Of a stretch of DNA of 64,000 nt, positions 22,311 through 39,041 are shown piece after piece. How positions within the stretch are numbered: position 1 is the first letter of the stretch; the number at the start of each line of letters is the position of its first letter. The translations under genes were made by a program, and so were the position numbers. Under the pieces are notes generated by a model. It saw nothing but the letters and a program-made list of their open reading frames with translations. It had not been told where the DNA came from and ran no database searches. The stretch spans positions 124,001-188,000 of IMG/VR virus record IMGVR_UViG_3300024252_000004; one strand, written 5' to 3'.

Positions 22311-22315
22311 CGCAT

Positions 22316-23710: not shown

Positions 23711-23822
23711 CCGTATGTCAAGCTTTTCTCCCCTGCGTGTGCGTGTCGGGGTGAAAAACAATTCAACTAAGTAACTCATAGGGTGTTATATCAAAGTATA
23801 ACAAAACCAAAGAGCAATCAAG

Positions 23823-24452: not shown

Positions 24453-24482
24453 AAAGAGCAATAGAAGATGTAAGGGGGCAAA

Positions 24483-24608
24483 GTGGAAATCGTCATCGTC
24501 TGGTACTCTGCGAACGAACGCGAAGACACTCCCGTGGAGGGGTTCTACCGATGGGATGATTCCCATTGTGGCGACAGCCTTTCCTTCGTCGGGACGGAGC
24601 TTCCATGA
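24483..24608 (+). CDS. Small hypothetical protein (41 aa, not in ORF track)
   Basis: AAGGGGG RBS, GTG start, ATGA overlap with the next gene. Confidence 0.55.
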   Translation: MEIVIVWYSANEREDTPVEGFYRWDDSHCGDSLSFVGTELP

Positions 24609-24919
24609 AAAGTCACGAAAAGTCTGATAGCAAACGCTGGGTGATTCAGCGCTGCGTTCGCTGCGGGCATTGGTGGGACCCGCATGGAATCTGGACAACC
24701 GACTGTCCGGCTCCGACCGAAGCTGCGCAGAGTCTGATGGCAGATCTGCGTGTGCTTGGCATCCGAAGCTCCGCCAAGCAGAATGTGGTGTTCGCATGGC
24801 GTACGAGGCGGGTGAATCCGTGGAATCGTAGGGAGTTCGATGCTCGGCACCAAACGGCCGAGGAAATCGAGAAAGAACTGCGAACCCATCCCACACGTCA
24901 GTCCCTTTACCGGGGCTGA
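24605..24919 (+). CDS. Hypothetical protein with CxxC
   Basis: RCVRCGH motif; translationally coupled start. Confidence 0.65.
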   Translation: MKSHEKSDSKRWVIQRCVRCGHWWDPHGIWTTDCPAPTEAAQSLMADLRVLGIRSSAKQNVVFAWRTRRVNPWNRREFDARHQTAEEIEKELRTHPTRQSLYRG

Positions 24920-25047
24920 GGTCGGGGAGAAAAGATTGTTATTCTTGTGAAGGTATTCTCCCCGATGCCTAAGCCGGGGTGAAAAACAATTCAACTAAGT
25001 AACTCACAAGATGTTATATCAAAGCGTAACAAAGGGATGAAGAAAGA

Positions 25048-25389
25048 ATGGGAACGGACCTGAACAAACTCCTTTCGGAGTGTGACGTTGAAACCTACGC
25101 TGCTTCGCGCGGTTCGGGTGGACAGAACGTCAACAAACGGGATACGGCGGTGCGTCTGACGCATCGTCCCACCGGAATCAAAGCCGGTTCCCGTTCCCAT
25201 TCCACGCAGGGACGGAATAAGAGCGAAGCGCTCAAACGTCTGGCAAAGAAGATCGCTCAGGCAAACGAGGTCAAGGCGGAGCGGTTGCCCACGGGAATCC
25301 CGCAGTCCGTCAAGGAAAAACGATTGTCTGATAAGCGTCGGACTTCTGCACGAAAGACCGGACGGAAGCCCGTCCGATCGGAGGACTGA
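25048..25389 (+). CDS. ArfB/PrfH-like GGQ peptidyl-tRNA hydrolase (stalled-ribosome rescue)
   Basis: SRGSGGQNVNKRDTAVRLTH.PTGI...Q.RNK..AL..L plus basic tail KRL.DKRR.S.RK..R. Confidence 0.88.
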   Translation: MGTDLNKLLSECDVETYAASRGSGGQNVNKRDTAVRLTHRPTGIKAGSRSHSTQGRNKSEALKRLAKKIAQANEVKAERLPTGIPQSVKEKRLSDKRRTSARKTGRKPVRSED

Positions 25390-25391
25390 TC

Positions 25392-25601
25392 ATGGGCAAG
25401 AAAGAACCCCTGATTGAGACGGCGGAATGCTGGTGCGGTAAAACTGTAACGTGTTCGTCAGAGGATTTCGGAAAGCCTGACGTGGTAGTCCCCGGATGGG
25501 TTTCTTGGAAGCCTATCAAGAAAGAATGTTCGTGCGGAGAGTCTCTGATCTTCGGAATGGACTTCGACAAGTTTCTGAACCTCTTTGAGGTGGAGTACTG
25601 A
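25392..25601 (+). CDS. Small Cys-rich (zinc-finger-like) protein
   Basis: ECWCG...ECSCG; GAGGA RBS. Confidence 0.7.
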   Translation: MGKKEPLIETAECWCGKTVTCSSEDFGKPDVVVPGWVSWKPIKKECSCGESLIFGMDFDKFLNLFEVEY

Positions 25602-25787
25602 ATGGTGTTCTACTACCTGATGTCTCGCGGCATCTTCGCTGGCCTGATGGCCTATGGCTACGCCCACTACGAGAGCGAGATCTGGATCTGGGCAGGACTC
25701 GTCGCGCTGGTGCCTTTCTTGGGCGAAATCGTGATGATCGGGTTCCTCGTTTTCACGATGTTCTTTCTGTTGGGGTCTTTCGCATGA
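25602..25787 (+). CDS. Small membrane protein
   Basis: Two hydrophobic segments; GGAG RBS. Confidence 0.7.
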   Translation: MVFYYLMSRGIFAGLMAYGYAHYESEIWIWAGLVALVPFLGEIVMIGFLVFTMFFLLGSFA

Positions 25788-26170
25788 AGTACGGACTTTC
25801 TCTCTCTTTCTGTGTGCGTGCGATCATTGATCGCGAGATCACTCTCTTCGAGATCGCTGGCATCATCTCTGCGACAAAGATGGAGTCGCCGGAGGAAGCG
25901 TACGAGCAGTACGGAAAGAGCTACTGGTCTGAGGCGTCAGAAGATGATGTGATGGTGGTCCTTCGGGAACTCTGGCCCCGAGTGATTCAGCCACGCATGT
26001 ACGGTCTTCCGCACCACAATATCTCCAAGGGAATCTGGTTGGAGGTTGCGCATGACCGGCTCCCGGTGCTCATCGAGGCGCGGCACTGTGCCTACTGGAT
26101 GGAGGGAACTGGTAACGAGCCCGCCATCGGTATGATTCGAAACGGTGGACTCTGGAAGTTTCTGGCCTGA
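25784..26170 (+). CDS. Hypothetical protein
   Basis: ATGA coupling, 128 aa. Confidence 0.75.
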   Translation: MKYGLSLSFCVRAIIDREITLFEIAGIISATKMESPEEAYEQYGKSYWSEASEDDVMVVLRELWPRVIQPRMYGLPHHNISKGIWLEVAHDRLPVLIEARHCAYWMEGTGNEPAIGMIRNGGLWKFLA

Positions 26171-26327
26171 GCCTACGCCGAGCCTCCAATCAAGGAGGCT
26201 CGGTCGGGGAGAAAAGATAATCATTCTTGTGAAGGTATTCTCCCCGAAGCACAGATAGGGGGTGAAAAACAATTCAACTAAGTAACTCATAAGATGTTAT
26301 AGAGAGGCACAGAATCGGGAGCAGAGA

Positions 26328-26843
26328 ATGGATATTCTTTCGAAAGTCGGCATGGTGGTTGGGGTGACTGCGCTTTGCGCTTCGCTCTACTCTGCTTACT
26401 CTCACTTCTACGATGGGAAAACCGTCCCCGAGAAGCTCCCGATGGTGGGGCAGGCTTGGTGGGTGGAAGGAAAGGGGACCGTTCTGGTCGCAGAAGTCTA
26501 CCCTGCGGAAGATCGGATCGTCTACAAGACCAAGAACCACAAGGGTGGATGGTCGGACGATCTGACTACTGAGTCTACTCTCGGGCAGTTCATGAACTAC
26601 TCTCGGGTCAACAAGAAGATGACGACTCACGAGTCCGCTCCTGAGAAGAAGGATCGGCGTCCGATGGTGGGTCAGATCTGGGAAGTCGCCGGCTTCGGTG
26701 ATGTGCGAGTCCTTTACTGCGACGGCTACTCCGTTAGCTACAGCTACAAACTGGATCCGTGGAGAAATGAGTCGAGTGAGACTACGGATCTCGAACTGTT
26801 CTACCACTACGGAAACGTCAAGAAAGAGAAGGAGGCCAAGTGA
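26328..26843 (+). CDS. Membrane-anchored protein with two internal repeats
   Basis: N-terminal hydrophobic helix; PMVGQAWWVEGKGTV / PMVGQIWEVAGFGDV repeat. Confidence 0.8.
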   Translation: MDILSKVGMVVGVTALCASLYSAYSHFYDGKTVPEKLPMVGQAWWVEGKGTVLVAEVYPAEDRIVYKTKNHKGGWSDDLTTESTLGQFMNYSRVNKKMTTHESAPEKKDRRPMVGQIWEVAGFGDVRVLYCDGYSVSYSYKLDPWRNESSETTDLELFYHYGNVKKEKEAK

Positions 26844-27169
26844 GTCTACCGAAGCTTCGCATTGGCAACATCGTCCACTGGAATGGCAATCCTTGGGGCG
26901 GAAAGGTTATCTCGAATGGATACGATCTGAATGGAGGGCTCGGGTTCTACTGTATCATCAAGGCTCCCCTTCAGCCCGTGCGCAGGGGTGGGCGTCCGCT
27001 CTGGCTGATCTTCGAAGACGGAACGGTGAGCCCTTCGCTGGGGGATTCCGAGCCTCTCATGTCCCTGCGTGTGAACGGTATCCCTTACCCTCTCGTCATC
27101 GAGGGAGAACTGGAGACGTACACGTTCGAAGGCGAGGGTGAACTCAAGTTCCTTCTGGAAACCCTGTAA
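26840..27169 (+). CDS. Hypothetical protein
   Basis: GGAGG RBS, GTGA coupling. Confidence 0.75.
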   Translation: MSLPKLRIGNIVHWNGNPWGGKVISNGYDLNGGLGFYCIIKAPLQPVRRGGRPLWLIFEDGTVSPSLGDSEPLMSLRVNGIPYPLVIEGELETYTFEGEGELKFLLETL

Positions 27170-27193
27170 ACTTCTCAAACCCGCGAGTAACTG

Positions 27194-27370
27194 ATGCTTA
27201 GGCTTCTTTGGGCCCTTGTCAAATGGGGCATCTTCAGTTGGATGATCGATGTCAGAGCTTTCGGCTGGCACATTTTCCCCAGGGAATGGTGTGCTTGGGC
27301 TGAATGCACTTCGAAAGAGTGTTTGGCTCTGGATGACTTCGATGCAGCTATCTTTCGGCTCAAGGGCTGA
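27194..27370 (+). CDS. Small hypothetical protein (58 aa, not in ORF track)
   Basis: MLRLLWALVKWG...RLKG, ends at the cassette boundary. Confidence 0.5.
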   Translation: MLRLLWALVKWGIFSWMIDVRAFGWHIFPREWCAWAECTSKECLALDDFDAAIFRLKG

Positions 27371-27459
27371 AGGACGGGGAGAAAAGATTGGAGGGTGAAA
27401 AAGAAAACACACAGGAAACTTATAAGATGTTATATGAGGTTGTATTCTCCGGAGACAAT

Positions 27460-27771
27460 GTGATTCCCAACAGCAACATCCCGTCCTACGCAATCCCCTT
27501 CCACATCGGCGTCTGCGGTCTGATCATCGCCTGGGCCCTCGGCGTTGAGGCTGCCAAGTTCATCACGGAGGCCGTGATCACGCTGATCGGTGCGCCGATC
27601 CACTTCGCCCTGTGGACTTTCGATGCTGCGATCGACGCGGTCTACCTGAACGGCTACGAGTACGACCATCCGGTCGATGTCAATGAGCGTGCTGCGTTCG
27701 CTGTCGCGTCCGGTCACAGTGGGTTCGCCCACCGGCCGAGTTCTCATATCAGCGGATGGCGAGGCTACTGA
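27460..27771 (+). CDS. Membrane protein
   Basis: GTG after GGAG, downstream of a promoter copy; hydrophobic helices. Confidence 0.7.
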   Translation: MIPNSNIPSYAIPFHIGVCGLIIAWALGVEAAKFITEAVITLIGAPIHFALWTFDAAIDAVYLNGYEYDHPVDVNERAAFAVASGHSGFAHRPSSHISGWRGY

Positions 27772-27902
27772 GCCTCTCCCGCTCCGGCTGCGGCCGGAGA
27801 TTGGGGAGAAAAGATAAGCATCCTTGTCAAGGAGTGAAAACCTTAACCCCCAAGAAACTCATAAGATGTTATAGAATGACACCAAAAGATATCGAGGAAA
27901 CC

Positions 27903-28346
27903 ATGAAGTCTCTGCTCAACAGTCTGAACAAGTCTCTCCCTTCGATCATGGGATCGAAGAACCAGACGATGATCGATGCTGCTGTGCTGCTCAAGGCATC
28001 GATCACCGATCAGATCAACGGCGGTGGCCCGAAGGGCTGGGTCTGGCAGGAGACCGTGAGCGACAGCTTCGTCGCCCTCGATCTTCACCATCCTCAGCGC
28101 GGAAAGATCCGGGTCTTCTCGGCTTCGGAAGCGTGCTGGGACTGGCGACAGTATCTCGGTCGCGGCTACAACATGGGCACCGTTAAGCTGCCAAATGGCG
28201 GGAACGAGCCTGTCGGACAGTACCGGAATTTCAAGACGGGATTTCGGAACATCGTTCAGATCGCGAAGATCCGGTGGGGATCCATCACGGTCGCGGACGA
28301 GAAGCGGAAGGTCAACGACCTCAAGGGGAAATTCCATTGGGGCTGA
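27903..28346 (+). CDS. Hypothetical protein
   Basis: GAGG RBS before ATG 27903 (alternative ATG 27876). Confidence 0.75.
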   Translation: MKSLLNSLNKSLPSIMGSKNQTMIDAAVLLKASITDQINGGGPKGWVWQETVSDSFVALDLHHPQRGKIRVFSASEACWDWRQYLGRGYNMGTVKLPNGGNEPVGQYRNFKTGFRNIVQIAKIRWGSITVADEKRKVNDLKGKFHWG

Positions 28347-28561
28347 ACGAACCGAAGTTCAAGACCTACGACGAGCGGAACCGTGCAGGCTGCTGTGCGC
28401 GGGGAAGCTGCGAAGAAAAGCTGTGTCCTGATGACACATGGATCAACAGCCTGAACAACAACAAGTACTGCGGTCCCTGCAAGGACTTCTTTTACTTTAG
28501 GCATGACCGATTCGCGACCGGAAAGATCCAGAGAAAGTGGACCCTCATGCCTTCGGGCTGA
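28337..28561 (+). CDS. Small Cys-rich hypothetical protein
   Basis: CC..C...C...C..C pattern; start uncertain (TTG). Confidence 0.5.
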   Translation: MGLNEPKFKTYDERNRAGCCARGSCEEKLCPDDTWINSLNNNKYCGPCKDFFYFRHDRFATGKIQRKWTLMPSG

Positions 28562-28609
28562 GGGGATTCACCCTGTCGGGGAGAAAAGATATACATTCTT
28601 GATAAGGAT

Positions 28610-28646
28610 TGGTACGGTTCTTGCACACACTGCAAGACCTATGCCA
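28610..28646. promoter_or_regulatory. Convergent twin sigma54 site palindrome
   Basis: TGGTACGGTTCTTGCA-cacac-TGCAAGACCTATGCCA. Confidence 0.8.
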
Positions 28647-28749
28647 TATAGCCTTTTGCCTATGCCCACCGGGGAGAAAAACTATTCATGTAAGTAACTC
28701 ATAGGGTGTTATATCAGGCCGTGAGAGCAACCTACCCGGAGAGTGCAGC

Positions 28750-29073
28750 ATGGCCCGACCGACCTACTTCCTGATCGATGACGATTCGCTGGAGACCTAC
28801 ACGACCCTGGACGCGGAGGATCTCGACAACTGGGCTGTTCTGGTGAACGGTGCCATCGTCTCCATCGAGGCGGACGAGGAGGACTGTGAGATCCGCATCG
28901 CTGAGATCAATCGGGAGGGTGACAACCTGACCAACGATCTGGGCTTCGGTGCCGAAACGCAGTGCGACGACGGCGACGACGCCGACGACGACCAGGGCGG
29001 AGTCTGGGGCGACTTCGACAACACGGTCGGTGCGGGCGAGTGGGCCGACAAGGCCGTCCAGAAGTCCTGGTGA
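28750..29073 (+). CDS. Very acidic hypothetical protein (possible DNA mimic)
   Basis: D/E-dominated 107 aa; GGAG RBS. Confidence 0.75.
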   Translation: MARPTYFLIDDDSLETYTTLDAEDLDNWAVLVNGAIVSIEADEEDCEIRIAEINREGDNLTNDLGFGAETQCDDGDDADDDQGGVWGDFDNTVGAGEWADKAVQKSW

Positions 29074-29363
29074 GTCGCCGTCTCGCAATCGTCCTCGATC
29101 CCGACAATAGCGATCCGGCCTGGGGTGCGGCTGAGGAGGCCGCCTTCCGGCGGTTCACCGACGAAAGCCACTACCCGGAGTCAGCCGAGGGCAATCCTGT
29201 TCCGGTTCTGGAAGGGGAGAGGATCCCGATCTACGATCTGATCGAGGCCGCCCGAGCCCTGGTGGACTGTGCCGATCACACCGGCTGTACCCCTGACCTC
29301 GCAGTTGTGGATTCCGATCCACTTTTCAAGCTCAAGCGTGTCCTCGACAGCATCGGAGAATGA
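29070..29363 (+). CDS. Hypothetical protein
   Basis: GTGA coupling; GC3-rich frame. Confidence 0.7.
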   Translation: MSRRLAIVLDPDNSDPAWGAAEEAAFRRFTDESHYPESAEGNPVPVLEGERIPIYDLIEAARALVDCADHTGCTPDLAVVDSDPLFKLKRVLDSIGE

Positions 29364-29890
29364 CAGTGATCCCCTTCGTCTCGCATCCATCGGGGAATGA
29401 CATGAGCGCCCCAGAAATCGATTGGGACAACCAAGACCTGATCTCGAAGTTCATGCTTGACATGGATTCCGGAAATGTCCTGATTTCTTTCGCCGCGAAC
29501 CTGAGCATGGCAACTGCCCATATCGCTCCGGAAAACTTCTCTGCGTTCGTGGACGCATACGAGAAGCTTGCGGCGATGGATCCCAGTGAGCTTCAGGGGA
29601 ATGAGGTTGCCGTATGGCAGGACGGGAAGGTCGTTCAGGTGGTGGGATTCCCTGACCTGAAGCCCACGGACTGGTACATCGAAGCGATGCTGGCAACGGC
29701 GTACATCAAGTTTCGCGACGGAAAGGGGATGTTCGAAGATCGTACCCGCCTCATGTGGCATGGTCCGATTGGCACCCGTGGAACCTTCCTTGTCGAAACC
29801 TGCAACATCCAGAAGGTGGCCAAGATGCTCCGAGCAGCGATCCCGCTCGTGGCGGCGGCTGTGAAAACCATGAAGGAAGGTACCGAATGA
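29360..29890 (+). CDS. Hypothetical protein
   Basis: ATGA coupling, GGAG RBS. Confidence 0.75.
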   Translation: MTVIPFVSHPSGNDMSAPEIDWDNQDLISKFMLDMDSGNVLISFAANLSMATAHIAPENFSAFVDAYEKLAAMDPSELQGNEVAVWQDGKVVQVVGFPDLKPTDWYIEAMLATAYIKFRDGKGMFEDRTRLMWHGPIGTRGTFLVETCNIQKVAKMLRAAIPLVAAAVKTMKEGTE

Positions 29891-30145
29891 AGCCCCTGAA
29901 AGAAGAGGATGCCCAAGCCATTCTCGCTGCGGCTTACAAGGCTGCGGCGGAAAAAAAAGAACACATGGCCCGTTATCCTCGATGTCTGCAAGGAGCGGGA
30001 AATCGAGTTCGGTTGGGCTTCCATGTTCTCCCTGATGACCGATTTCTTCTACGAAGATGTGCGTGAATGGAGTGAAGGAAACTACGGAAAGGACGCCATC
30101 TATTTCTACGCTCTGATTCCAGAAGACGAAAGCCATTCGGGGTAA
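29887..30145 (+). pseudogene. Frameshifted hypothetical gene (+1 shift at an A8 run)
   Basis: MKPLKEEDAQAILAAAYKAAAEK joins KNTWPVILDVCKEREIEFGW... if one A of 29951-29958 is removed. Confidence 0.65.
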
Positions 30146-30304
30146 GGTCTACGAGGTGGGGGAATAGTCCCCTCCCTCCGGGGAGAAAACTATTACAAAT
30201 TAAGCAATGTTTTTCTCCCCGAGCCAGGAGCGGGGTGAAAAGAAATACACACAAGTAACTCATAGGATGTTATAGAGAGGCGCCTCCAATCATAGAGAGT
30301 CTCA

Positions 30305-30596
30305 ATGAATCGCCTCTTTCGCGTCTTCGTCTTCCTGGCCGCCACCGCCGCCCTTTTCGTCGTTCTTCCGGGGTTCAACCCTTCGACCCTGAACGAGATC
30401 ACGACCAGCGGCCTCGGCACGGTCGCGAAGGGGTTCCCTCGTGCCGGAGGTCTTCAAGCACCCCGGTGCATGTACCTTCGAACCGGCATACACGGATTCG
30501 ATGACGTACAGGGTCAGCTACATCGTGGGAGGACTCGTCTTCGCCTACGTCTTGGGGAAGCTGATCCAGAAGAAGAAGAAGAAGAAGAAGAAGTAG
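30305..30596 (+). pseudogene. Frameshifted membrane protein with poly-Lys tail (+1 shift at TTCCCTC)
   Basis: Removing one C at 30436-30438 gives ...KGFLVPEVFKH...IVGGLVFAYVLGKLIQKKKKKKKK*, with the GC3 bias of neighbouring genes. Confidence 0.65.
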
Positions 30597-30714
30597 GGAG
30601 TCAGGGCTTCGGCCCTCCCTCAGGGGAGAAAAAGATTGCATTATCGATAAGGGGTGAAAACCTTAACACACAGGAAACTCATAAGACGTTATAGAGTGAC
30701 ACATGGAGAGGGTA

Positions 30715-30873
30715 ATGTGGTCATACAGTGAAGCTTCAATCCTCGCATCGCTTCCGCTTTTCGCGGTTGCAATGCTGATTGACTTCGAAGTCTTCGCTGT
30801 CCCAAGAACGACCATCTATCTCCTTCCGCTTATTCCGTTCGTGACGTTTCTGTTCTCCCGAGGTAAATACTGA
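30715..30873 (+). CDS. Small membrane protein (52 aa, not in ORF track)
   Basis: GGAGAGGG RBS, two hydrophobic segments, TGATG coupling. Confidence 0.65.
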   Translation: MWSYSEASILASLPLFAVAMLIDFEVFAVPRTTIYLLPLIPFVTFLFSRGKY

Positions 30874-31637
30874 TGGACATCGAACGATTCAAGAAGCTGG
30901 CAAGTCAGGCGCGTAGCTTCCGAGGTCTCATTGACTTCGCGGACCCCTACTGGGAGTCCTCCGTTTTCTTCGAGATTCCCTCGGCCAATGAGAAGGACGA
31001 GTACGCTTGTCCGCTCGCATCGTCGGACAATCTGGATTTCCTGGCAGGGATGTTCGGTGCGGGTAGCGACCTTCACGTCTGGAACTGCGTGTTCGTGTCT
31101 GAGCCTTCCGAAGAGGTTCGGGAGAGCTACAGTACCCACGGCAACAAGATGGCGCGGTACGTCCTGTGGACGGACAACCCAAGGTATCGCTCCGTCGATT
31201 TGATGAAGAACTTCATCCGTGACTTCACGCTCGGTTGGCGGCTGGCTCTCGCGCCCATCCGTGCGGCAGAGAAGGCCGCCGCAAAGGAAGCGGAAGAAGC
31301 CTTCCAGTCTCGCTGCGATGATTGGGTGAAGGTTTTCGGAGATGCCATCCAAAACTACAAGGTCGATTCGCGTGGGAACGAGTTCGCCGGGATTACCTTC
31401 AAGAAGGACCCCGACTTCAGAGCCTTCTACAGCCGCGTGACCTCGAAGGTCATGACGGCAGAGCAGTTCAGTGTGTACCGCCCCGGGACGCAGGAACTCT
31501 ATGGCAGGGGCAAAACTGTGAACGGGTCATTCGATCTGTACACGTTCGGTGCTCACCTGGAGATGTGGACCAACTGCTACCCGGATGATCCCGCGAACAA
31601 GGCTTACCGAAAGATCCGGCATCTTTGCCGGGTCTGA
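30873..31637 (+). CDS. Hypothetical protein
   Basis: 254 aa, coupled start, GC3-rich. Confidence 0.8.
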   Translation: MDIERFKKLASQARSFRGLIDFADPYWESSVFFEIPSANEKDEYACPLASSDNLDFLAGMFGAGSDLHVWNCVFVSEPSEEVRESYSTHGNKMARYVLWTDNPRYRSVDLMKNFIRDFTLGWRLALAPIRAAEKAAAKEAEEAFQSRCDDWVKVFGDAIQNYKVDSRGNEFAGITFKKDPDFRAFYSRVTSKVMTAEQFSVYRPGTQELYGRGKTVNGSFDLYTFGAHLEMWTNCYPDDPANKAYRKIRHLCRV

Positions 31638-31683
31638 CCACGGGGCTTCGGCCCACCATCTATTCTGCTGAGAGGAGAGAATC

Positions 31684-31869
31684 ATGAGTATCCCAGGTTC
31701 CGATGGTGTCCGACAGACTTACATCAGTTTGGCACGCACGATCGCAAACGGGCACAATGCTTCGCCCGAAGAGATCAGTTGGGCCATCAGCATGCTCGAA
31801 AGCTTCAAGCGCCCTTCTCCGAAGAGTGTTTGGTACCTGAATAAGCTCAAGGCAAAGGTGGGAGGCTGA
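31684..31869 (+). CDS. Small hypothetical protein
   Basis: GAGGAG RBS. Confidence 0.7.
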   Translation: MSIPGSDGVRQTYISLARTIANGHNASPEEISWAISMLESFKRPSPKSVWYLNKLKAKVGG

Positions 31870-31941
31870 CGCCCTCCCTCCGGGGAGAAAAAGATTGCAT
31901 TGCCAAAGCGGGGAGAAAAGATTTATTCTTGTCAGGAATGT

Positions 31942-31978
31942 TGGCACGATCCTTGCATACACTGCAAGAGCTATGCCG
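31942..31978. promoter_or_regulatory. Convergent twin sigma54 site palindrome
   Basis: TGGCACGATCCTTGCA-tacac-TGCAAGAGCTATGCCG. Confidence 0.8.
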
Positions 31979-32085
31979 GAAGTTTTTCACCCCGGGGAGA
32001 AAAGATTGTCATGGGGTGAAAAAGATGACAATGCCCCACCGGGGAGAAAAGATTAGTACACAGGAAACTCATAGGGTGTTATAGA

Positions 32086-32162
32086 GTGTCGTCAGAGAGG
32101 CCGAGAGGATGGCCCACGCTACGGCAACGCATACTGAGTCGGTCATTCAGAGGAATAGACCA
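32086..32162 (+). ncRNA. Possible small structured RNA between two promoter copies
   Basis: Hairpins GGCC-GAGAGGAT-GGCC and GGTC-ATTC-AGAG-GAAT-A-GACC; no credible ORF. Confidence 0.35.
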
Positions 32163-32275
32163 AAGTTTTCTAAACAACTCATGATGTGTTATCATAGAGC
32201 GTCTGAAACGACCCAACCCGAGAGCTTGACTCTCAACACCCCGAGAGCTTGTCTCTCAAAGCCAAGGAAATCCCC

Positions 32276-32863
32276 ATGTCCAACACCGACTTCGAAGCCC
32301 TCGACGGTCTTGACCTCTCCGACAACAAGACGCTCAGCAGCATCGACATTCTCGGCGCGAACTTCACCGCCGGTCGCAAGGATGGGCAGCTCTGCGTCGT
32401 CTTCAAGACCAACGGCGGCAAGGGCTCCGGTCCCCAGACCGTTCGCGCGACCGAGCTCATCGAGTTCCGCGACACCCTGCACGAGTGTGTCGCCCGAGGG
32501 GAGGGGAGCACGGTCGAGGCCGGTTACATCCCCGCGCCGATCCTGCTCGGACGCAGCTTCGCGCTCGTCGCGAATCCCGGTCCCGGTCGCAACAAGAAGA
32601 ACGAGGTGACGCCCGCGCCCTTCGGCGGACGCGACTACTACGAGTGGAACAGCAACACGGGGCAGGGCACCGCGTCCAAGGGCTCCAAGCCCGCCAAGGT
32701 TCCGGTGGACGAGATTGATGGTTTCCTGGCCCTCTTCGACAAGAACGTGGACCAGACGGTCAGCCGGTTGATCTCCCTGGGGCTCATGGCGGACGAGGAC
32801 GCGGACGAGGACGAGGACGAGGGCGACGAGGTCGATCTCGACGGCATCGGTGACGAGGACTGA
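32276..32863 (+). CDS. Putative single-stranded nucleic-acid-binding protein (PUR/PC4-like repeats, long acidic tail)
   Basis: Two beta-sheet+helix units ending ELIEFRDTL / EIDGFLALF; tail DEDADEDEDEGDEVDLDGIGDED; AAGGA RBS. Confidence 0.55.
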   Translation: MSNTDFEALDGLDLSDNKTLSSIDILGANFTAGRKDGQLCVVFKTNGGKGSGPQTVRATELIEFRDTLHECVARGEGSTVEAGYIPAPILLGRSFALVANPGPGRNKKNEVTPAPFGGRDYYEWNSNTGQGTASKGSKPAKVPVDEIDGFLALFDKNVDQTVSRLISLGLMADEDADEDEDEGDEVDLDGIGDED

Positions 32864-33169
32864 ACGGTCACAGGTTGAGGGGCTTAACCGCCCCGAAACC
32901 AAGGCTCAACCAGCCGGTTAATCCCGGCTGGTTCGAGCTTCATTGTGTTTGTAAAGTTTTTCACCCCAGATGCGGGTGAGCACATGCAAAAGTTTTCACC
33001 CCCCGCTCGTAAGATTTTTCACCCCATACCTGCAAGCACACGCAAAAGTTTTCTCCCCGGCGGCCGGGTTGGGGTGAAAACCTTAGCACACAGGAAACTC
33101 ATAGGGTGTTATAGAGTGACGCCGGTAGAACTAACCGGTTAGCTTCCAAACCATGACCCCGAGGTCCAC

Positions 33170-33616
33170 ATGTCCCAGATGTCCAGTGCTCTCCTGCTTC
33201 TCGCCGCCAGCACGCTCCCCTCCGACACCGATGCCGCTTCCCTCCGGCTGATGCCCGCCGCCCTCCGCGATGCCGTCGAGGCCAAGCAGGCCGACGCCAA
33301 GGGGCAGGCCCTGGACGACGCGGCCGAGTCGGTGATGGCCCTGATCTCGAAGATGACCGACTACAAGCGCGGCACCCTCGTCGAGATCCGCCAGTACCGC
33401 CAGTACATCGCCCAGGAGAAGGGCCGGCTGGATGAGATCGATCGTGCCTTCGCGTACGGCAACGCGACCAGCAACTACATGCCCCTCATGATCGCGCTCG
33501 GAATGTCCACCGCGACCAGCGGCATGATGACCAGCGCGGACCGGGAGCGGCTGTCGGTCATCCCCGATGGTTGGACCCCGCCCGCCGATGTCCCGGCCGC
33601 GCCGACTGCCGGCTGA
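33170..33616 (+). CDS. Helical/coiled-coil hypothetical protein
   Basis: GAGG RBS, GC3-rich. Confidence 0.8.
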   Translation: MSQMSSALLLLAASTLPSDTDAASLRLMPAALRDAVEAKQADAKGQALDDAAESVMALISKMTDYKRGTLVEIRQYRQYIAQEKGRLDEIDRAFAYGNATSNYMPLMIALGMSTATSGMMTSADRERLSVIPDGWTPPADVPAAPTAG

Positions 33617-33619
33617 GAA

Positions 33620-34040
33620 TCTGACGAATGGGGGCCGGGCCAGTCCCGGTCCCCTGAGTCACACACGTCCGAACATGAATGCTAGGGACAGTGCGCGTGA
33701 AGGCCGCGCCCAGCCGAAAGGTTGCTCCGCTTTAAATTATGTTCGGCAGATCTGAGCAGAAACGGTGAAAAGGCATACTTGTTGCCTAAATGGTTTCGAG
33801 GAAGCCGCATAAGTATCCGTGGACGCAAGGAAGAGCCAAAACCTCGCTTCGGTATAGACAGTACACTAAAGACACTCGAACACATAAAGCTTATTAATCT
33901 TGTTTCTAGATTATTTGAGCACGCTATCGAGTTAGCCTGCCGGGAAGGGGGCTGCGTCTAATCACTCTTCGGAGTGGTTCTCGAAAGAGTAAGTGGGACT
34001 GGTATCGGGGCAAACCCACCGGGTGTAAATCCGGTGGGCG
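33620..34040 (+). ncRNA. Putative ~420-nt structured non-coding RNA
   Basis: Dense hairpins (GGGGCCGGG/CCCGGTCCCC, CCGAACAT/ATGTTCGG, CACTC-TTCG-GAGTG, CTC-GAAA-GAG, CCCACCGG/CCGGTGGG); the only ORF is a TTG-start 79-codon frame lacking the local codon bias. Confidence 0.5.
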
Positions 34041-34145
34041 ATGGGGGAGAAAAGATATACATCCTTGTCAAGGAGTGAAAACTATAACATAGGTCTTTTC
34101 TAAACTTCTTGTAGGGTGTTATAGAATGTTGCCAAACAACGGGGA

Positions 34146-34688
34146 ATGCAGATGCCTTTGACTGCGAAACAGGAAGCGCGAGTGGACATGCTCCTCCCGT
34201 ATTTCGATGAGGAATCCTTGGCAGCTTTCGCTGAGGAAGAGAACAGCCGGAACAACCCCGAAGACATCGTGGAACGAATCCTCACGGAGGTCACGGTCTA
34301 CGAAAAGGCAGGCGTCCGCAATCAGTACACGGGAACATACCGTGGTCATCCATTCATCATCGGAGAGGAAAACCGATACGTTGATGATGGGTTCACCCTT
34401 CGTGAAATGTATATCCGAACGCAGTACGGTGCAGGACGTGCGAGCAAGAAGATGATGGTCTTCATGATCTCCGGAAAGGTCGGAGGATATCCGACCGATG
34501 GACTGCGGTTCACAGACGAATTCAAGGGTCCGCTTGCGGACGTTCTCCAGTGTCTCTTCGAAGCTGCAAAGACGCGGTACAGAGATGCTGAGATTGAGCG
34601 TCTGATGAAGGCAGACACGAACACACCCACCCCAAAGGATGATGGAGATTTCGGACTCGATTCTCTCATCGTCACTCCACCCAACTGA
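34146..34688 (+). CDS. Hypothetical protein
   Basis: GGGG RBS after a promoter copy, 180 aa. Confidence 0.8.
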   Translation: MQMPLTAKQEARVDMLLPYFDEESLAAFAEEENSRNNPEDIVERILTEVTVYEKAGVRNQYTGTYRGHPFIIGEENRYVDDGFTLREMYIRTQYGAGRASKKMMVFMISGKVGGYPTDGLRFTDEFKGPLADVLQCLFEAAKTRYRDAEIERLMKADTNTPTPKDDGDFGLDSLIVTPPN

Positions 34689-34715
34689 GGCGAAAGCCTG
34701 CGAAGTGAGGTCAGC

Positions 34716-34922
34716 ATGAACACAACTCTCGAAACCCCGTATCTCGGTCGCTCCGATGGTGGCAAGTTCGGATGGCGGAAGCCCAGCCGTCGCACCGAGG
34801 CTGCCGAGCGACAGACCGCACGCGATGCCCGAAGCACCGCCGAGCAGATCGCCGAACTCGATGCCCGTCTGGGTGTCGGCATCGGAGCGACGAAGGAGCG
34901 CGCACGTCTCTCCGCAGAGTAG
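34716..34922 (+). CDS. Small hypothetical protein
   Basis: GAGG RBS. Confidence 0.7.
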   Translation: MNTTLETPYLGRSDGGKFGWRKPSRRTEAAERQTARDARSTAEQIAELDARLGVGIGATKERARLSAE

Positions 34923-35040
34923 AGAAACCCTGTGTCCCCTGGTTTTCCAGGGGACACTCGGGGAGAAAAGATTTGCAGCCCCCAAGGGGAGAAAACTATA
35001 ACATTAGTCTTTTCTAAACTTCTTGTAGGGTGTTATATTA

Positions 35041-35300
35041 AAGTGTCCCCAGAGAGCAGGATACAACGGAAGTTACGCAAGCAAACACTGCGATGATTGC
35101 AAGCATACCAAATAATGTAAGCCGTCTGAGCAGGCAGGAACCTGCAAGGTAAGCATTAGGCAATGAGCGGGATATACCATTGAGACATGGAAGCTGATTG
35201 AGCGGGAAGGAACCTGCGAAGCGAGTGTCATAGGGAGCGCTGATTAGGCGCTGTGTTGACGGCGAGGGTTAAGCCACTTAGGGGCCAGTCAACTTTAAAC
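35041..35300 (+). ncRNA. Putative structured RNA / long pre-tRNA leader
   Basis: Follows the promoter copy at 35031; no ORF; internal repeat GAGC(A/G)GG(C/A)AGGAACCTGC; stems GTGTCC/GGATAC, AGCGC/GCGCT, GTTGAC/GTCAAC. Confidence 0.5.
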
Positions 35301-35305
35301 GTAGA

Positions 35306-35382
35306 GCCGCCTTAGCTCAGTTGGATAGAGCGTCGGCTTTCTAAGCCGGGGGTCGCTGGTTCGAGTCCAGCAGGCGGTACCA
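35306..35382 (+). tRNA. trnR: tRNA-Arg (anticodon UCU) with encoded CCA
   Basis: Acceptor GCCGCCT/AGGCGGT, D-arm GCTC-AGTTGGATA-GAGC, anticodon loop TTTCTAA, T-arm GCTGG-TTCGAGT-CCAGC, ACCA end; 77 nt. Confidence 0.97.
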
Positions 35383-35384
35383 CT

Positions 35385-36170
35385 TCACACACTCTCGGAG
35401 GCGGCAATACGCAGGGCTCAACCAACACACGTTTCGGCGTGGTATATACGGCCCGGGTTTACGAATAAGACTGTTGGGAATAGTAGACCAGATGCAGGGG
35501 AAGATCCTGTCCGAGACACACATCCACGGACAAGCTCAGCCGTGGACGAAAAGATGGGCGATTAGAGCATATGATTCTTAAGAGGGGCTGGTGCCCATGT
35601 CGAAAGACGAAACCAGTGCAACCCTCCATGCCCCGGATTTGCTGCGGGGTAGGATGTAGCAGGGGAGGATAGACGGTAAGACAGCATTACCTTCACGTCC
35701 CTGACATCCGCCAAGACAACCCAATCCTTGCGTAAGACACGCGCGCTTAGATAGCCAATAGGTTCAGACATGTTTTGATTAGTGGGCGACTAGCCCGCCA
35801 CTCAGTTAACGAGTGGGAATCTTAAGTGACTAACGATTGAGTTAAGTTGACAGAGTTGAGTTGAATAAAAATTGCGTTCATTGTGTCTTGATTGTAGCAC
35901 ATGCAGTTGAGACTGTCCGAAACGATAACCATAAAGGTGGACATAGACGAGGGCCCGTCGAGCCCTATGTGTAACGACATGGCGACCAGCATTAGATGCG
36001 GTCGTAACGTTTGGGTCGGATTACTTCTTGGTAAGGTGTTGGTCTAAGCGCAACGTAAATGCTTTCGAAGGGCACGCACACCCGTTCTTTGATTGCATAA
36101 GGCGTAAGGATAGTAATGGTAGCCGCCGCACACCCAAACATAACACCATCCACAGTACCAAAAATGGGGG
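35385..36170 (+). ncRNA. Putative large (~790 nt, possibly two) structured RNA downstream of the tRNA
   Basis: No credible plus-strand ORF before ATG 36175; many hairpins (CACGT-TTCG-GCGTG, CCACGG/CCGTGG, GTC-GAAA-GAC, CCACTC/GAGTGG, ACATAG/CTATGT, GTTTGGGT/ACCCAAAC). Confidence 0.6.
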
Positions 36171-36174
36171 AGTC

Positions 36175-36420
36175 ATGAGAAGTAGAGATGTCGTGAAAGC
36201 CTGGGATAATGGAGTCCCAGCAGAAACAAAGAACCTGCGTACTGACGGTTTCGATCTGTGGTCTTACGAAGTGCTGATTGGTACTCGCCCAAACGCAAGC
36301 GCACAAATCGTCTTCGACTACACAGCTCCGGCTGGACATTTCGAATCACACACAACTTCGGTTCATGTGGGACTCGCGAAAAGAATCACGAACGCAAACG
36401 TGATTGAGCCTCCGGAATAA
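36175..36420 (+). CDS. Hypothetical phage protein
   Basis: GGGGGAG RBS; VVKAW...NLRTDG..LWSY..LIG pattern recalled from phage proteins (unverified). Confidence 0.75.
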   Translation: MRSRDVVKAWDNGVPAETKNLRTDGFDLWSYEVLIGTRPNASAQIVFDYTAPAGHFESHTTSVHVGLAKRITNANVIEPPE

Positions 36421-36422
36421 AG

Positions 36423-36530
36423 AGTAACCCCGAACACTCACAAGAATACTGGACATGCATCATGTTCAGCCTTCTTCTCTCTACAGGGTGTTTTATCCCG
36501 TGTTCTTTTGAGTGCTCGGGGTGTACTCCA
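36423..36530 (+). other. Long imperfect hairpin / structured leader
   Basis: GAGTAACCCCGAACACTCACAAGAATAC pairs with GTGTTCTTTTGAGTGCTCGGGGTGTACTC (about 28 bp) around an inner TGGACATG/CATGTTCA hairpin. Confidence 0.6.
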
Positions 36531-36664
36531 CATATACGCGTCCGCTACAAAGCGGAGTAACTCACCAATACCATTCGGGAGAGTATCAGGTTGTAGGACG
36601 ATCTGATTCATCTTGGCGCGTAGTGATAGTCCTTTCATATACACGAAACGGTAGGGAGCAGGCA

Positions 36665-37294
36665 ATGGCGACGAAGGAAAATTTCCAGAATCTCAAGCCT
36701 GACGTGATCGCAAAGACTCGCCTGTACTCTGACAACTCCCAGAGCTTCACAGTGCTCCATGGTGTCACCATGGAAGCGGCGCGTTATCACCTGAGTGTCA
36801 ATGAGAAGCTTGGTGGTAAGCCAGCACGGTCAATGCTCTTCAGGAAAATCTGCGACTTCACCTGTTTCGATGACAACCTCGGACGTGCGTACATGCCGCA
36901 ACCGTGGGCAAAGGGAATCCTTCCCATCTTCCCAAAGAAGTGGATGGTGAGCTTCGCCAATGGTTCGAAAATCGATCTGAGCTACACGGTTAGGCCGGGA
37001 AGCAAAAGGCAGATCGTTGGATATTCCTACGCTCTCGTACGACAAATAACCACTGGTGGGATCGGCATCTCCAAATTGACCAAGATTCTTTTGGAGGTTG
37101 GTTACTCGGGCCTCACCGTAGGTGACGTGATGGCAGCCGTAAAGTCCAGACCAGATCTGTTCGCGCCGCATAAGGGGCTTTCACAGTGGACCGTCAAGAG
37201 GGCTTATGACGCTGAGCCTATCTTGGAGGGTGATGCGGTGGCACAAACCAACAAGACGCTTCTGAAGGTCTTCAGACTCCTGCGTGACAAGTGA
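36665..37294 (+). CDS. Hypothetical protein
   Basis: GGGAG RBS before ATG 36665. Confidence 0.75.
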   Translation: MATKENFQNLKPDVIAKTRLYSDNSQSFTVLHGVTMEAARYHLSVNEKLGGKPARSMLFRKICDFTCFDDNLGRAYMPQPWAKGILPIFPKKWMVSFANGSKIDLSYTVRPGSKRQIVGYSYALVRQITTGGIGISKLTKILLEVGYSGLTVGDVMAAVKSRPDLFAPHKGLSQWTVKRAYDAEPILEGDAVAQTNKTLLKVFRLLRDK

Positions 37295-37536
37295 GTCCTC
37301 CGGTCTGGATCAATCTGCTTCCGCACGGATTCTATAAGCTCACAAGCTACAAGGGAATTGGATGGATGGGATTCCATTACCATGACTGTGGTGTGGAGTT
37401 TATCGAACGGTTCCAGGTGAAGTCATATTCGTTCTACTTTTGGGGAATGACTGACTGGCCCACCACGATGATTGGTCTGCTTGGAAGCGGGGAACTGATC
37501 AAGGTTGAACGCCACGAGATAAGGGGAGAGGTTTAG
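37291..37536 (+). CDS. Hypothetical protein
   Basis: GTGA coupling. Confidence 0.65.
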   Translation: MSPPVWINLLPHGFYKLTSYKGIGWMGFHYHDCGVEFIERFQVKSYSFYFWGMTDWPTTMIGLLGSGELIKVERHEIRGEV

Positions 37537-37826
37537 CCTCGTCCCCTCCGGGGAGAAAAGATTTACATCCTTATCAAACGAACATAGACCACCCTTCCCG
37601 GCATGGCTGTTCGAATATGTACACGCCGCATTCAGTTTCAGAAGATGCCAATTGAATGACTTGGTTTGGCCCGGATAATTTACCCAGTAAACGATAGTTT
37701 TTTCTTTGTAATTAACTACCGCACTTATCTACCTCTTCTATTCTCGACGGTGTGTTGAAGGTTCTCCCGAAGGTCTACCTAACAGTTAGTAAGTGAAAAA
37801 GTCCCTTACAGGGCTCTTCCATAACC

Positions 37827-37851
37827 CTATAACCCCCTACCAGTTATTTAG
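37827..37851 (-). promoter_or_regulatory. Reverse-oriented copy of the cassette promoter
   Basis: Minus strand reads CTAAATAACTGGTAGGGGGTTATAG; compare AACTGGTAGGGTGTTATAG at 23001. Confidence 0.6.
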
Positions 37852-38181
37852 AAAAGAACAATGTATCACCACAACACACCATCATCTAACCCTGCCCCCA
37901 CCGGGGAGAAAAGTTTTGCACGGCACCACCCACCACCGGGGTGAAAACTTTAACATCAGGTTTAACATGTCTATCTATCATCATTCAAGACTCAAACATA
38001 CCAGCACATACCACTCAACTCCTTAGGGTACATACTATGGCATTCAATCCAGAGAGCAAATCGAACTATCCTTTACTGATAAGAATGTGATAAGCATCGC
38101 TCTATTCTAATTTTCTCATAGGACGTTATCAGTAGTTGAACTGTACCGGATCAATCAGACCCAACTGTCAGGAGTTTAACA

Positions 38182-38385
38182 ATGGCGTTTCACCGATACG
38201 ATGATAGAACCAAGGATCGCGAGAAGGATAGCAATGATGTCGCTGCATTCCTTGAGAGTGGTGGGGAGATCACTCGCGTTCCCAACGGACAAAAGATGAA
38301 GAAGCTTCGCCGGAGCAGAGCATCATCTGATCGGAAGTCAAAGGACAACGGACTCGAAGTCCTGTTCGATCTGAATCAGTTCTGA
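38182..38385 (+). CDS. Small protein resembling the SutA RNA-polymerase-binding domain
   Basis: DVAAFLESGGEITRVP motif; AGGAG RBS. Confidence 0.5.
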   Translation: MAFHRYDDRTKDREKDSNDVAAFLESGGEITRVPNGQKMKKLRRSRASSDRKSKDNGLEVLFDLNQF

Positions 38386-38678
38386 TTCCTATATGATGTC
38401 ATAGATAGCGTAGGTAATACAGTTACTTGCGCTGTCTGTGGTTCAGAGTTCGACTTAATCCGGTACACACTTACTCTTTTTCTCAGAGAGATCGACTTTT
38501 CCTGTAGAAACGGAACCTCTTTTTCTGAGAAAAAACACTTTTTCCTGTGGAAACGCGATATAGAGAATCGCATACATCTTGAAGTTTTCTACGGTGACGG
38601 GTTTAAGTACCGCACACTGTGTTACTTCGCACACAGGTAATTTTTTACAACTTTTTGTATAAGCTACATAGAGGGTCC

Positions 38679-39041
38679 ATGCTTCTCTACATCATTCGCG
38701 ACGACTGTGTCTTCCCAAACGCCAGTCACAATCAGGTAATGATTGACGACTTCGGCCTCACACTTTCACCCAGGAGTGTGCGTGATCGTCTGTGTGAGTA
38801 CCGTCAAATCGAAGACCTTCATGAAACGGAAGACGAGACATTCGAGTTCGTCCTTGTGACTCGCAGCATTCCTGCGATGAACTGGTTTGCTCGTGAGCTT
38901 GGCTATGAGAGTGTGATGGTCTGGTGTCCGGCCACTGATTCTTGGATCTCGATTACTGACGAGCTTACTTACGATTTCCTGGCGCACTTTGCGCTTGGGG
39001 ATCTGTACCTGAATGGTCATCTCGATATTGAGGCTGACTGA
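38679..39041 (+). CDS. Hypothetical protein
   Basis: GAGGG RBS before ATG 38679. Confidence 0.7.
   Translation: MLLYIIRDDCVFPNASHNQVMIDDFGLTLSPRSVRDRLCEYRQIEDLHETEDETFEFVLVTRSIPAMNWFARELGYESVMVWCPATDSWISITDELTYDFLAHFALGDLYLNGHLDIEAD

What the first reader, a model, noticed from the sequence alone, without database searches (positions are those of the whole stretch)
35385..36170. About 790 nt of hairpin-dense non-coding sequence directly after tRNA-Arg
Seen: no ORF between the tRNA CCA and ATG 36175. There are at least 10 hairpins and a long-range GTTTGGGT/ACCCAAAC helix. A low-structure stretch near 35830-35885 may split it into two RNAs. Established: GOLLD and ROOL RNAs are several hundred nt long and often sit next to tRNA genes in phages. 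Inference: a GOLLD/ROOL-like or new large RNA released from a tRNA-containing precursor.
Basis: partly seen in the sequence, partly recalled or inferred. Interest (0 to 1): 0.72.

Follow-up and report, generated by a model that had tools for sequence, protein, structure and literature searches.

The report
Untranslated spacer behind a phage tRNA
A 792-base gene-free stretch lies between a tRNA gene and a small gene in one predicted transcription unit of a 395-kb marine phage. It is real and probably transcribed, but it matches no known giant RNA family (GOLLD, ROOL and the rest) and folds no better than the phage's ordinary genes.

Summary
The window is part of a 395,127-bp marine jumbo-phage contig with about 44 tRNAs and a tmRNA. 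The stretch 35383-36174 is non-coding: every frame has 6-18 stops of all three kinds, so no recoding opens it. It has no copy or decayed paralogue elsewhere in the genome.

It sits in a predicted transcription unit. A phage-specific 34-nt promoter ends at 35037 (52 copies on +, 1 on -). Then come a 265-nt leader, tRNA-Arg(TCT), the 792 nt, a real 81-aa gene (421 homologues, DUF8033-like) and a terminator-like hairpin. There is no internal promoter or terminator.

The hairpins exist: 9 stems of at least 5 bp against 4.6+-1.7 in shuffles, MFE z about -1.8 to -2.2, on the + strand only. But eight coding controls from the same genome score the same or better (z -0.9 to -5.1). The 8-bp long-range helix is at chance level.

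No Rfam family matches, and GOLLD and ROOL give nothing at E<=10 genome-wide. No relatives exist in any collection searched, so covariation cannot be tested. One 249-nt metatranscriptome contig is a weak hint of transcription.

Verdict: an untranslated tRNA trailer and long 5' UTR. A new structured RNA is possible but unshown.

The parts
34932..34957 (+). Perfect 11-bp hairpin (GTGTCCCCTGG tttt CCAGGGGACAC) that closes the upstream unit of the 180-aa and 68-aa ORFs. Terminator-like but without a U tract.
   Evidence: (I7). Similar GC hairpins precede most copies of GGGGAGAAAAGAT.
34960..35037 (+). About 80 nt of regulatory repeat. It is 86% identical to 34044-34123. It starts with GGGGAGAAAAGAT and ends with the 34-nt phage promoter consensus (35004-35037, PWM score 31.3).
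35040..35305 (+). ORF-free leader between promoter and tRNA. It holds two 31-nt direct repeats (35115-35145 and 35187-35217, 81% identical), each forming a 5-bp hairpin. Overall fold z is -0.85.
   Evidence: (D1)
35306..35382 (+). tRNA-Arg, anticodon TCT, with CCA encoded
   Evidence: ARAGORN; Rfam RF00005 at 68.5 bits
35383..35830 (+). Segment A of the trailer: GC about 0.53-0.55, roughly 8 predicted hairpins, MFE z -2.68 (1 of 100 shuffles), centroid close to the MFE. This is the part most likely to be a folded RNA.
35831..35884 (+). AT-rich linker (GC 0.36-0.40) with two 12-nt direct repeats, GAGTTAAGTTGA at 35839-35850 and GAGTTGAGTTGA at 35853-35864, followed by ATAAAAATT
   Evidence: It is spanned by the RNA-run contig 35675-35923.
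35885..36174 (+). Segment B of the trailer and proximal 5' UTR of the next gene. It has a 12-bp hairpin with several G-U pairs at 35885-35913 and an overall z of -0.93. A possible 20-codon uORF (36116-36178) has a TGA that overlaps ATG 36175.
36175..36420 (+). Real 81-aa gene of a widespread small phage-protein family (DUF8033-like), function unknown
   Evidence: 421 homologues at E<=1e-3; Atlas neighbours are nearly all viral, some carrying PF26096; no Pfam or PHROG hit for the protein itself
36449..36469 (+). Terminator-like hairpin followed by a T-rich tail; likely end of the unit

Best explanation
The 792 nt are the untranslated middle of one phage transcript. The order is: promoter ending at 35037, a 265-nt leader, tRNA-Arg(UCU), the 792-nt trailer, the 81-aa DUF8033-like gene, and a hairpin at 36449-36469.

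SHOWN: the stretch is non-coding under any stop-codon reading, is unique in the genome, and lies between a promoter-consensus site and a real gene, with no internal promoter or terminator motif.

INFERRED: host RNase P, together with endonucleolytic cutting behind the encoded CCA, releases the tRNA. That leaves the trailer as the long 5' UTR of the small gene's mRNA. Its GC-rich first ~450 nt (segment A) may persist as a folded by-product. The AT-rich stretch at 35831-35884 is a likely RNase E-type entry site.

It belongs to no described RNA family. Its predicted folding is typical of this phage's transcripts and not exceptional.
For: The stretch is ORF-free with all stop types in every frame. 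tblastn and nhmmer find no paralogue or decayed gene in the genome.

The promoter PWM gives 52 hits on + and 1 on -, cleanly separated. One hit ends at 35037 and none lies in 35045-36480. Other promoters sit 20-80 nt from their ORF, or 14-64 nt from a tRNA. No terminator-like site occurs on + between 35040 and 36449.

The downstream ORF is real. Folding excess is specific to the + strand. A 249-nt contig identical to 35675-35923 is present in a seawater metatranscriptome run. No neighbouring gene in 33200-38800 is represented in that run.
Against: There is no direct transcript mapping. The RNA contig has depth about 2 and no strand information, could be DNA carry-over, and would land in this stretch by chance about 1 time in 7.

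The promoter is defined only from sequence recurrence. A spacer of 792 nt is about 10 times longer than this phage's usual UTRs, and a plain 5' UTR role does not explain that. Processing steps are inferred from general bacterial tRNA maturation and are not tested.
Confidence: 0.5

Rival explanations
1. A new, orphan large structured ncRNA. It would be either segment A (about 450 nt) or the whole 0.8-1.1 kb with the tRNA embedded. It would be made from the tRNA precursor and would work like GOLLD or ROOL, as a stable folded, possibly multimeric phage RNA.
For: Setting and size fit what is described for GOLLD and ROOL: phage-encoded, next to tRNA, several hundred nt (10.1101/2024.12.08.627333). 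They also fit the unclassified ~800-nt ICP1 ncRNA (PMC7567579). Segment A has z -2.68 and a well-defined centroid. Stems of at least 5 bp number 9 against 4.6+-1.7, and the longest stem is 12 bp against 7.5+-1.4, with G-U pairs that make it specific to the + strand. Some other ORF-free stretches of this genome are RNA genes: a group I intron and extra tRNAs. There is the RNA-run contig.
Against: No Rfam match at all. Coding controls fold as well or better. Segment B and the leader show no signal. No homologue exists anywhere, so no covariation can be shown. Long-range pairings are at chance level.
Confidence: 0.2
2. Functionless leftover DNA at a module boundary. The stretch lies at the right-hand edge of a GC-rich block (window about 17.9-35 kb). 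It could be the decayed remnant of genes or of a recombination event that brought in a second tRNA-Arg(TCT).
For: There is a composition shift at this point. The promoter cassette is a duplicate of the one at 34044-34123, and a DNA contig joins the two copies, which shows recombination or assembly collapse there. The genome has another, dissimilar tRNA-Arg(TCT) at genome 289653. Several other long ORF-poor stretches lie in the same 17-45 kb region.
Against: No frame shows residual similarity to any protein of the genome. Phage DNA is otherwise about 90% coding. The folding bias is strand-specific. The sequence is identical in all samples that hold the phage, though this only shows a clonal population.
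Confidence: 0.2
3. It works at the DNA level or through tiny ORFs. One option is a protein-binding or replication element centred on the AT-rich repeats at 35839-35864. Another is translated micro-ORFs, for example the 20-codon ORF 36116-36178 coupled to the 81-aa gene through ATGA, or the 20-codon ORF 35597-35659 that has an SD.
For: Two 12-nt direct repeats sit beside an A/T run. Two 20-codon ORFs have SD-like sequences.
Against: There are only two repeat copies. Cumulative GC skew shows no inflection. No hexamer coding signal appears. Micro-ORFs of this size are expected by chance.
Confidence: 0.1

Closest known systems
GOLLD RNA (Rfam RF02032)
   Same: Phage-encoded, several hundred nt, often beside or around tRNA genes. 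A marine example lies downstream of tRNA-Met, and tRNAs can sit in its linker. Here the stretch is also in a marine phage, directly behind a tRNA.
   Different: No match to the covariance model at E<=10 anywhere in the genome. No conserved 3' domain is recognisable, and no covariation data exist.
ROOL RNA (Rfam RF03087)
   Same: Large phage or prophage RNA, often near tRNA islands, of unknown function.
   Different: No match at E<=10. This tRNA lies 33 kb away from the phage's main tRNA island.
Stable RNAs of the phage T4 tRNA cluster (species 1 and 2, rnaC/rnaD; from my own knowledge, not checked in a paper here)
   Same: Non-tRNA RNAs co-transcribed with phage tRNAs and cut out of the same precursor by host RNases, with function unknown. 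This is the closest match to the mechanism proposed here.
   Different: Those are about 120-140 nt and tRNA-like in fold. Here the stretch is 792 nt and has no tRNA-like element.
Unclassified ~800-nt ncRNA of Vibrio phage ICP1 (PMC7567579)
   Same: An ORF-less gap of about 1 kb in a lytic phage that gives an abundant long transcript belonging to no Rfam family.
   Different: ICP1 has no tRNAs, and its RNA is shown by RNA-seq. Here transcription is only inferred.

Membership tests
GOLLD (RF02032) | Score at or above the Rfam gathering score (150 bits) for the covariance model of the conserved domain | tested here: not met
   No hit at E<=10 in the whole genome. None in cmscan of 34000-36600 at E<=10.
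GOLLD (RF02032) | Phage or prophage location next to tRNA genes; length of about 500-800+ nt | tested here: met
   792 nt directly 3' of tRNA-Arg in a jumbo phage. Family description.
GOLLD / ROOL | Ornate secondary structure supported by covariation among homologues | not testable with these tools
   No homologue in IMG/VR, JGI metagenomes, GenBank phages, the Logan k-mer index or the 5.8-billion protein-cluster database searched via flanking genes.
ROOL (RF03087) | Score at or above the gathering score (99.1 bits) | tested here: not met
   No hit at E<=10 in the whole genome or. The control genomes also gave no hit, so sensitivity was not demonstrated there.
OLE, HEARO, group I/II introns, tmRNA, RNase P, small ribozymes and riboswitches (all Rfam 15) | Any covariance-model match | tested here: not met
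   Only the tRNA matches in the window at gathering score. Only sub-threshold miRNA-type noise appears at E<=10, and it lies outside 35383-36174. The same tool does find a group I intron and a tmRNA elsewhere in this genome.
Degenerate tRNA array | tRNA-like cloverleaf elements in the trailer | tested here: not met
   The Rfam tRNA model gives nothing further at E<=10. ARAGORN finds extra hits only at an 80% threshold, and these are judged spurious. nhmmer with the unit finds tRNA-like repeats in another unit (U86890) but none in this trailer.
Protein-coding gene under an alternative code | A frame that opens when one stop codon is reassigned (the genome carries a CTA-anticodon tRNA) | tested here: not met
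   TAA, TAG and TGA all occur in every one of the six frames.

The most novel reading that the evidence does not exclude
The tRNA trailer, above all its first ~450 nt (35383-35830), is a new class of large structured phage RNA. It would be made by cutting a tRNA-containing precursor, analogous in role to GOLLD or ROOL but unrelated in sequence. It is so far known only from this one marine jumbo phage.
Probability: 0.15. Interest if true: 0.65.

Novelty: new member of a known kind. Interest (0 to 1): 0.27.

Why it matters
If the trailer proved to be a stable folded RNA, it would add an orphan example to the small set of large phage RNAs linked to tRNA genes. The function of those RNAs (GOLLD, ROOL, the T4 stable RNAs, the ICP1 ncRNA) is still unknown. 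It would also show that such RNAs exist outside the families that covariation searches can find.

As it stands, this is an ordinary if unusually long untranslated spacer in a well-defined phage transcription unit. Because it is a singleton, no computation can validate it. The promoter map and the other ORF-less units of this phage are probably the more useful by-products.

Tried and rejected
1. Rfam membership. The whole window at gathering score, 2.6 kb at E<=10, and GOLLD and ROOL genome-wide gave nothing but the tRNA.

2. Relatives for covariation. Two flanking proteins (81 aa and 180 aa) and one more distant protein of the window (765 aa) were run against IMG/VR and returned only the identical phage or distant proteins. 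The UvrD helicase gave at best 43% identity, in unrelated 50-100 kb phages. The 209-aa and 180-aa neighbours against 5.8 billion protein clusters found only themselves. A promoter-pattern scan of IMG/VR returned fragments of the same phage. A tRNA-pattern scan of JGI metagenomes returned the source contig plus a 99.96% identical contig whose 3 differences lie outside the region. The same kind of pattern against GTDB genomes gave nothing. GenBank phages matched the tRNA only. The SRA k-mer index returned only identical copies.

3. Closest homologue of the 81-aa gene (55% identity). Its upstream DNA is unrelated.

4. Decayed paralogue or internal repeat. None found.

5. Stop-codon recoding. Excluded.

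6. tRNA with intron, permuted tmRNA or extra tRNAs in the trailer. Only hits at a lowered threshold, not backed by Rfam.

7. Replication origin. No skew inflection.

8. Hairpin density as evidence. Rejected after the coding controls.

9. Long-range helices (16-nt 35587/35975 pair, 8-bp 36011/36133 pair, leader-trailer pairs). All are near chance expectation.

10. T7-like RNA polymerase as reader of the promoter. Not found. A sigma-70-family gene is present.

Full report
WHERE THE WINDOW LIES. The window is bases 124001-188000 of a 395,127-bp virus contig, rated 100% complete by CheckV. The contig comes from seawater metagenomes. ARAGORN finds 44 tRNAs and a tmRNA. My crude hexamer gene calls put 492 of 525 genes on the + strand and about 90% of the DNA in genes. 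Window genes include topoisomerase I, a UvrD-type helicase, adenylosuccinate synthetase and a T4 Rnl1-like RNA ligase. It is a marine jumbo phage.

THE OBSERVATION. tRNA-Arg(TCT) lies at 35306-35382, with 68.5 bits to RF00005 and an encoded CCA. From 35383 to 36174 the + frames carry 14-18 stops and the - frames 6-10. TAA, TAG and TGA all occur in every frame, so reassigning one stop codon cannot open a frame. That check was warranted because the genome has a CTA-anticodon tRNA. The longest + strand ATG ORF is 48 aa without an SD. The stretch has no second copy in the genome, and no frame resembles any other part of the genome. ATG 36175 follows GGGGGAG and starts an 81-aa protein. That protein has 421 homologues at E<=1e-3 among 1.84 billion representatives, many aligning from residue 1. 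Its Atlas neighbours are viral clusters, some carrying DUF8033. The non-coding gap and its limits are therefore confirmed.

ARE THE HAIRPINS MORE THAN CHANCE? The + strand MFE is -252.9 kcal/mol. Its z-score is -2.24 with 20 shuffles and -1.81 with 60. The - strand gives z +0.37 and +0.94. The MFE holds 17 hairpins. Nine have at least 5 uninterrupted pairs, against 4.6+-1.7 in shuffles (0 of 60 reach 9). The longest stem is 12 bp, against 7.5+-1.4.

Taken alone, that looks like a + strand-specific excess. I then ran the same statistics on eight 792-nt coding segments of the same genome. They gave MFE z from -0.9 to -5.1 (six of eight at or below -2.2), 6-14 such hairpins and longest stems up to 11 bp. 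Sliding 160-nt windows show the same picture: mean z is about -1.2 in the trailer, and coding windows nearby reach -2.0 to -2.5. The stretch is thus not more structured than this phage's ordinary mRNA.

The signal is uneven along the unit:
- Segment A, 35383-35830: z -2.68, with 1 of 100 shuffles as good.
- Segment B, 35884-36174: z -0.93.
- The leader, 35040-35305: z -0.85.

By my own estimate, about five perfect 8-nt complements are expected by chance in 792 nt, and the pair is not among the helices with P>0.7. The best long-range pair is 35587-35602 with 35975-35990, at 14 of 16 positions. My estimate of its chance expectation is about 0.1-0.3 for the region searched. The AT-rich dip at about 35800-35950 is real.

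TRANSCRIPTION UNIT. A roughly 80-nt element at 34960-35037 is 86% identical to one at 34044-34123. Its 3' part matches a 34-nt motif with consensus ACAAATTTTTCTAAATTTCTCATAGGATGTTATA. I turned the motif into a weight matrix. It gives 52 hits on the + strand and 1 on the - strand, with no scores between 12 and 18 bits, so the set is cleanly separated. The hits sit 20-80 nt upstream of SD-preceded ORFs, or 14-64 nt upstream of tRNAs. This is what a promoter family would look like, but the promoter role is inferred, not shown. The phage has a sigma-70-family gene and no T7-like polymerase.

The copy ending at 35037 scores 31.3. The best score inside 35045-36480 is -14. No terminator-like site lies on + between 35040 and 36449-36469. 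The predicted unit therefore runs as follows: promoter, 265-nt leader, tRNA-Arg, 792-nt trailer, 81-aa gene, hairpin. Among the 52 promoters this is the longest distance to a first SD-preceded ORF (+1138) apart from one other, a unit that Rfam shows to hold further tRNAs.

RNA EVIDENCE. Only one RNA run held any of the sequence. Laid on 33200-38800, it contributes one 249-nt contig identical to 35675-35923 at depth 2.2. It also gives tRNA cross-matches from other organisms, and nothing on the six or so flanking ORFs. The contig bridges the AT-rich stretch. This is a hint that the trailer is transcribed and perhaps more abundant than its neighbours. But the contig has no direction, DNA carry-over cannot be excluded, and a single piece would fall in the 792 nt about one time in seven by chance.

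KNOWN FAMILIES. cmscan against all 4227 Rfam 15 families finds only the tRNA in the window at gathering score. At E<=10 on 34000-36600 it finds only noise, and that noise lies outside the trailer. RF02032 (GOLLD) and RF03087 (ROOL) give no hit at E<=10 in the whole genome. The tool is not blind in this genome. In the tRNA island it finds the tmRNA, a group I intron and about 40 tRNAs, among them two ARAGORN had missed. ARAGORN with introns allowed finds nothing more in the trailer. At an 80% threshold it reports a permuted tmRNA and extra tRNAs, but Rfam does not back them. The trailer therefore belongs to no described RNA family.

COMPARATIVE EVIDENCE. None could be obtained.
- IMG/VR holds only identical fragments of the same phage.
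- The best helicase relatives are 43% identical and lie in much smaller phages.
- The 209-aa and 180-aa neighbours have no homologue but themselves among 5.8 billion protein clusters.
- JGI metagenomes hold the source contig and a 99.96% identical one whose three differences lie at 34832, 34833 and 39346.
- GTDB species genomes lack this tRNA.
- GenBank phages match only the tRNA.
- SRA runs hold only identical copies.
- The closest homologue of the 81-aa gene has unrelated upstream DNA.
Covariation, the defining evidence for GOLLD or ROOL-type RNAs, cannot be tested.

INTERPRETATION. The best-supported reading (confidence about 0.5) is that the 792 nt are the untranslated middle of a tRNA-mRNA co-transcript. 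In this reading the tRNA is removed by RNase P and by cleavage behind the encoded CCA, which is general knowledge of bacterial tRNA maturation and not tested here. The trailer then stays as a very long 5' UTR of the DUF8033-like gene. Segment A may survive as a folded by-product.

A new structured RNA (about 0.2) is not excluded. The setting matches what the literature says of GOLLD and ROOL, which are phage-encoded and near tRNAs, with a marine GOLLD lying behind tRNA-Met (10.1101/2024.12.08.627333). It also matches the unclassified ~800-nt ICP1 RNA (PMC7567579). Some other ORF-free stretches of this genome are RNA genes.

Leftover DNA at a module boundary (about 0.2) fits three facts. The tRNA sits at the right edge of a GC-rich block. 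The promoter cassette is duplicated, and one DNA contig joins the copies by skipping 914 nt. The phage also has a second, dissimilar tRNA-Arg(TCT).

DNA-level elements or micro-ORFs (about 0.1) rest only on two 12-nt repeats and two 20-codon ORFs with SD-like sequences.

VERDICT. The non-coding gap is real, and its place in a tRNA-containing unit is well supported by sequence logic. The claim of exceptional hairpin density fails against coding controls. Membership in GOLLD, ROOL or any other Rfam family is rejected. A new large RNA remains an untested possibility for a singleton sequence. Interest is low to moderate.

Noticed in passing
window 17858-38130 and genome-wide (promoter 3' ends listed): A 34-nt promoter-like motif (consensus ACAAATTTTTCTAAATTTCTCATAGGATGTTATA) occurs 52 times on + and once on -. 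Twenty-two copies lie within window 17.9-38.1 kb. Copies sit 20-80 nt before ORFs, or 14-64 nt before tRNAs. A few ORFs start 2-8 nt after TTATA, which would mean nearly leaderless mRNAs. The phage has a sigma-70-family gene (genome 361386-361553) but no T7-like RNAP.
   Followed up: partly
window ~17900-35000: A block of 0.52-0.64 GC lies in a genome of about 0.39-0.48 GC. It is packed with small ORFan genes and promoter copies of a distinct subtype (..AACTAAGTAACTCATAG..). tRNA-Arg sits at its right edge. The origin of the composition shift is unexplained.
   Followed up: partly
window 20035, 21232, 28578, 31910 (and 12 other copies of the 13-mer): The 13-mer GGGGAGAAAAGAT occurs 16 times on + (allowing one mismatch), 15 of them in window 20-38 kb, usually just after a GC hairpin. 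Four copies are followed by sigma-54-like TGGCAC-N5-TTGCA sequences (for example ctggcacggactttgca). No Sigma54_activat gene was found in the phage.
   Followed up: partly
window 34044-34123 and 34960-35037: These are about 80-nt direct repeats, 86% identical. One DNA-run contig joins 34092 to 35007, skipping 914 nt that hold the 180-aa and 68-aa ORFs. This is either a natural deletion variant or an assembly collapse.
   Followed up: no
window 35115-35145 and 35187-35217: Two 31-nt direct repeats (81% identical, 72 nt apart) lie in the tRNA leader. Each forms a 5-bp hairpin (GCAGG/CCTGC and GCGGG/CCTGC), with an A-U to G-U change between the copies. They could be a protein-binding or processing signal.
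   Followed up: no
window 36116-36178: A 20-codon ORF with an AAGGA SD has a TGA that overlaps ATG 36175 (ATGA). It could be a coupled leader peptide for the 81-aa gene.
   Followed up: no
window 23018-23790 and 20171-20700: Two further promoter-headed stretches (about 770 and 530 nt) lack a credible + strand ORF and have no Rfam match. They may be further untranslated units of the same kind.
   Followed up: partly
L093:2170-2630 (genome 208170-208630): Group I catalytic intron (RF00028, 72.2 bits) in an ORF-poor gap of the phage.
   Followed up: no
L093:5265-6012 (genome 211265-212012): The unit behind promoter 210890 holds tRNA-Asn with an odd ATT anticodon plus two more Rfam tRNA hits that ARAGORN missed. 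One of them spans 156 nt, so it may hold an insertion or intron.
   Followed up: partly
window 25048-25389; genome 325213-325615; genome 302460-302537: Translation-rescue and decoding kit: a 113-aa RF-1-domain protein (ArfB-like), a tmRNA (81 bits) and a tRNA with a CTA anticodon (amber-suppressor type). TAG is the rarest stop in my crude gene calls, ending 72 of 525.
   Followed up: no
genome 289653-289728: A second tRNA-Arg(TCT) lies in the main tRNA island. BLAST and nhmmer did not pair it with the copy at window 35306, which is closer to tRNA-Arg(CCT) at genome 193869 (83% identity). The two TCT genes therefore have different histories.
   Followed up: no
window 38182-38385 and 60270-61559: A 67-aa protein has a sub-threshold match to the SutA RNAP-binding domain (27.2 bits against a cut-off of 29.3). 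A T4 Rnl1-like RNA ligase is also present, which is of interest for tRNA repair.
   Followed up: no
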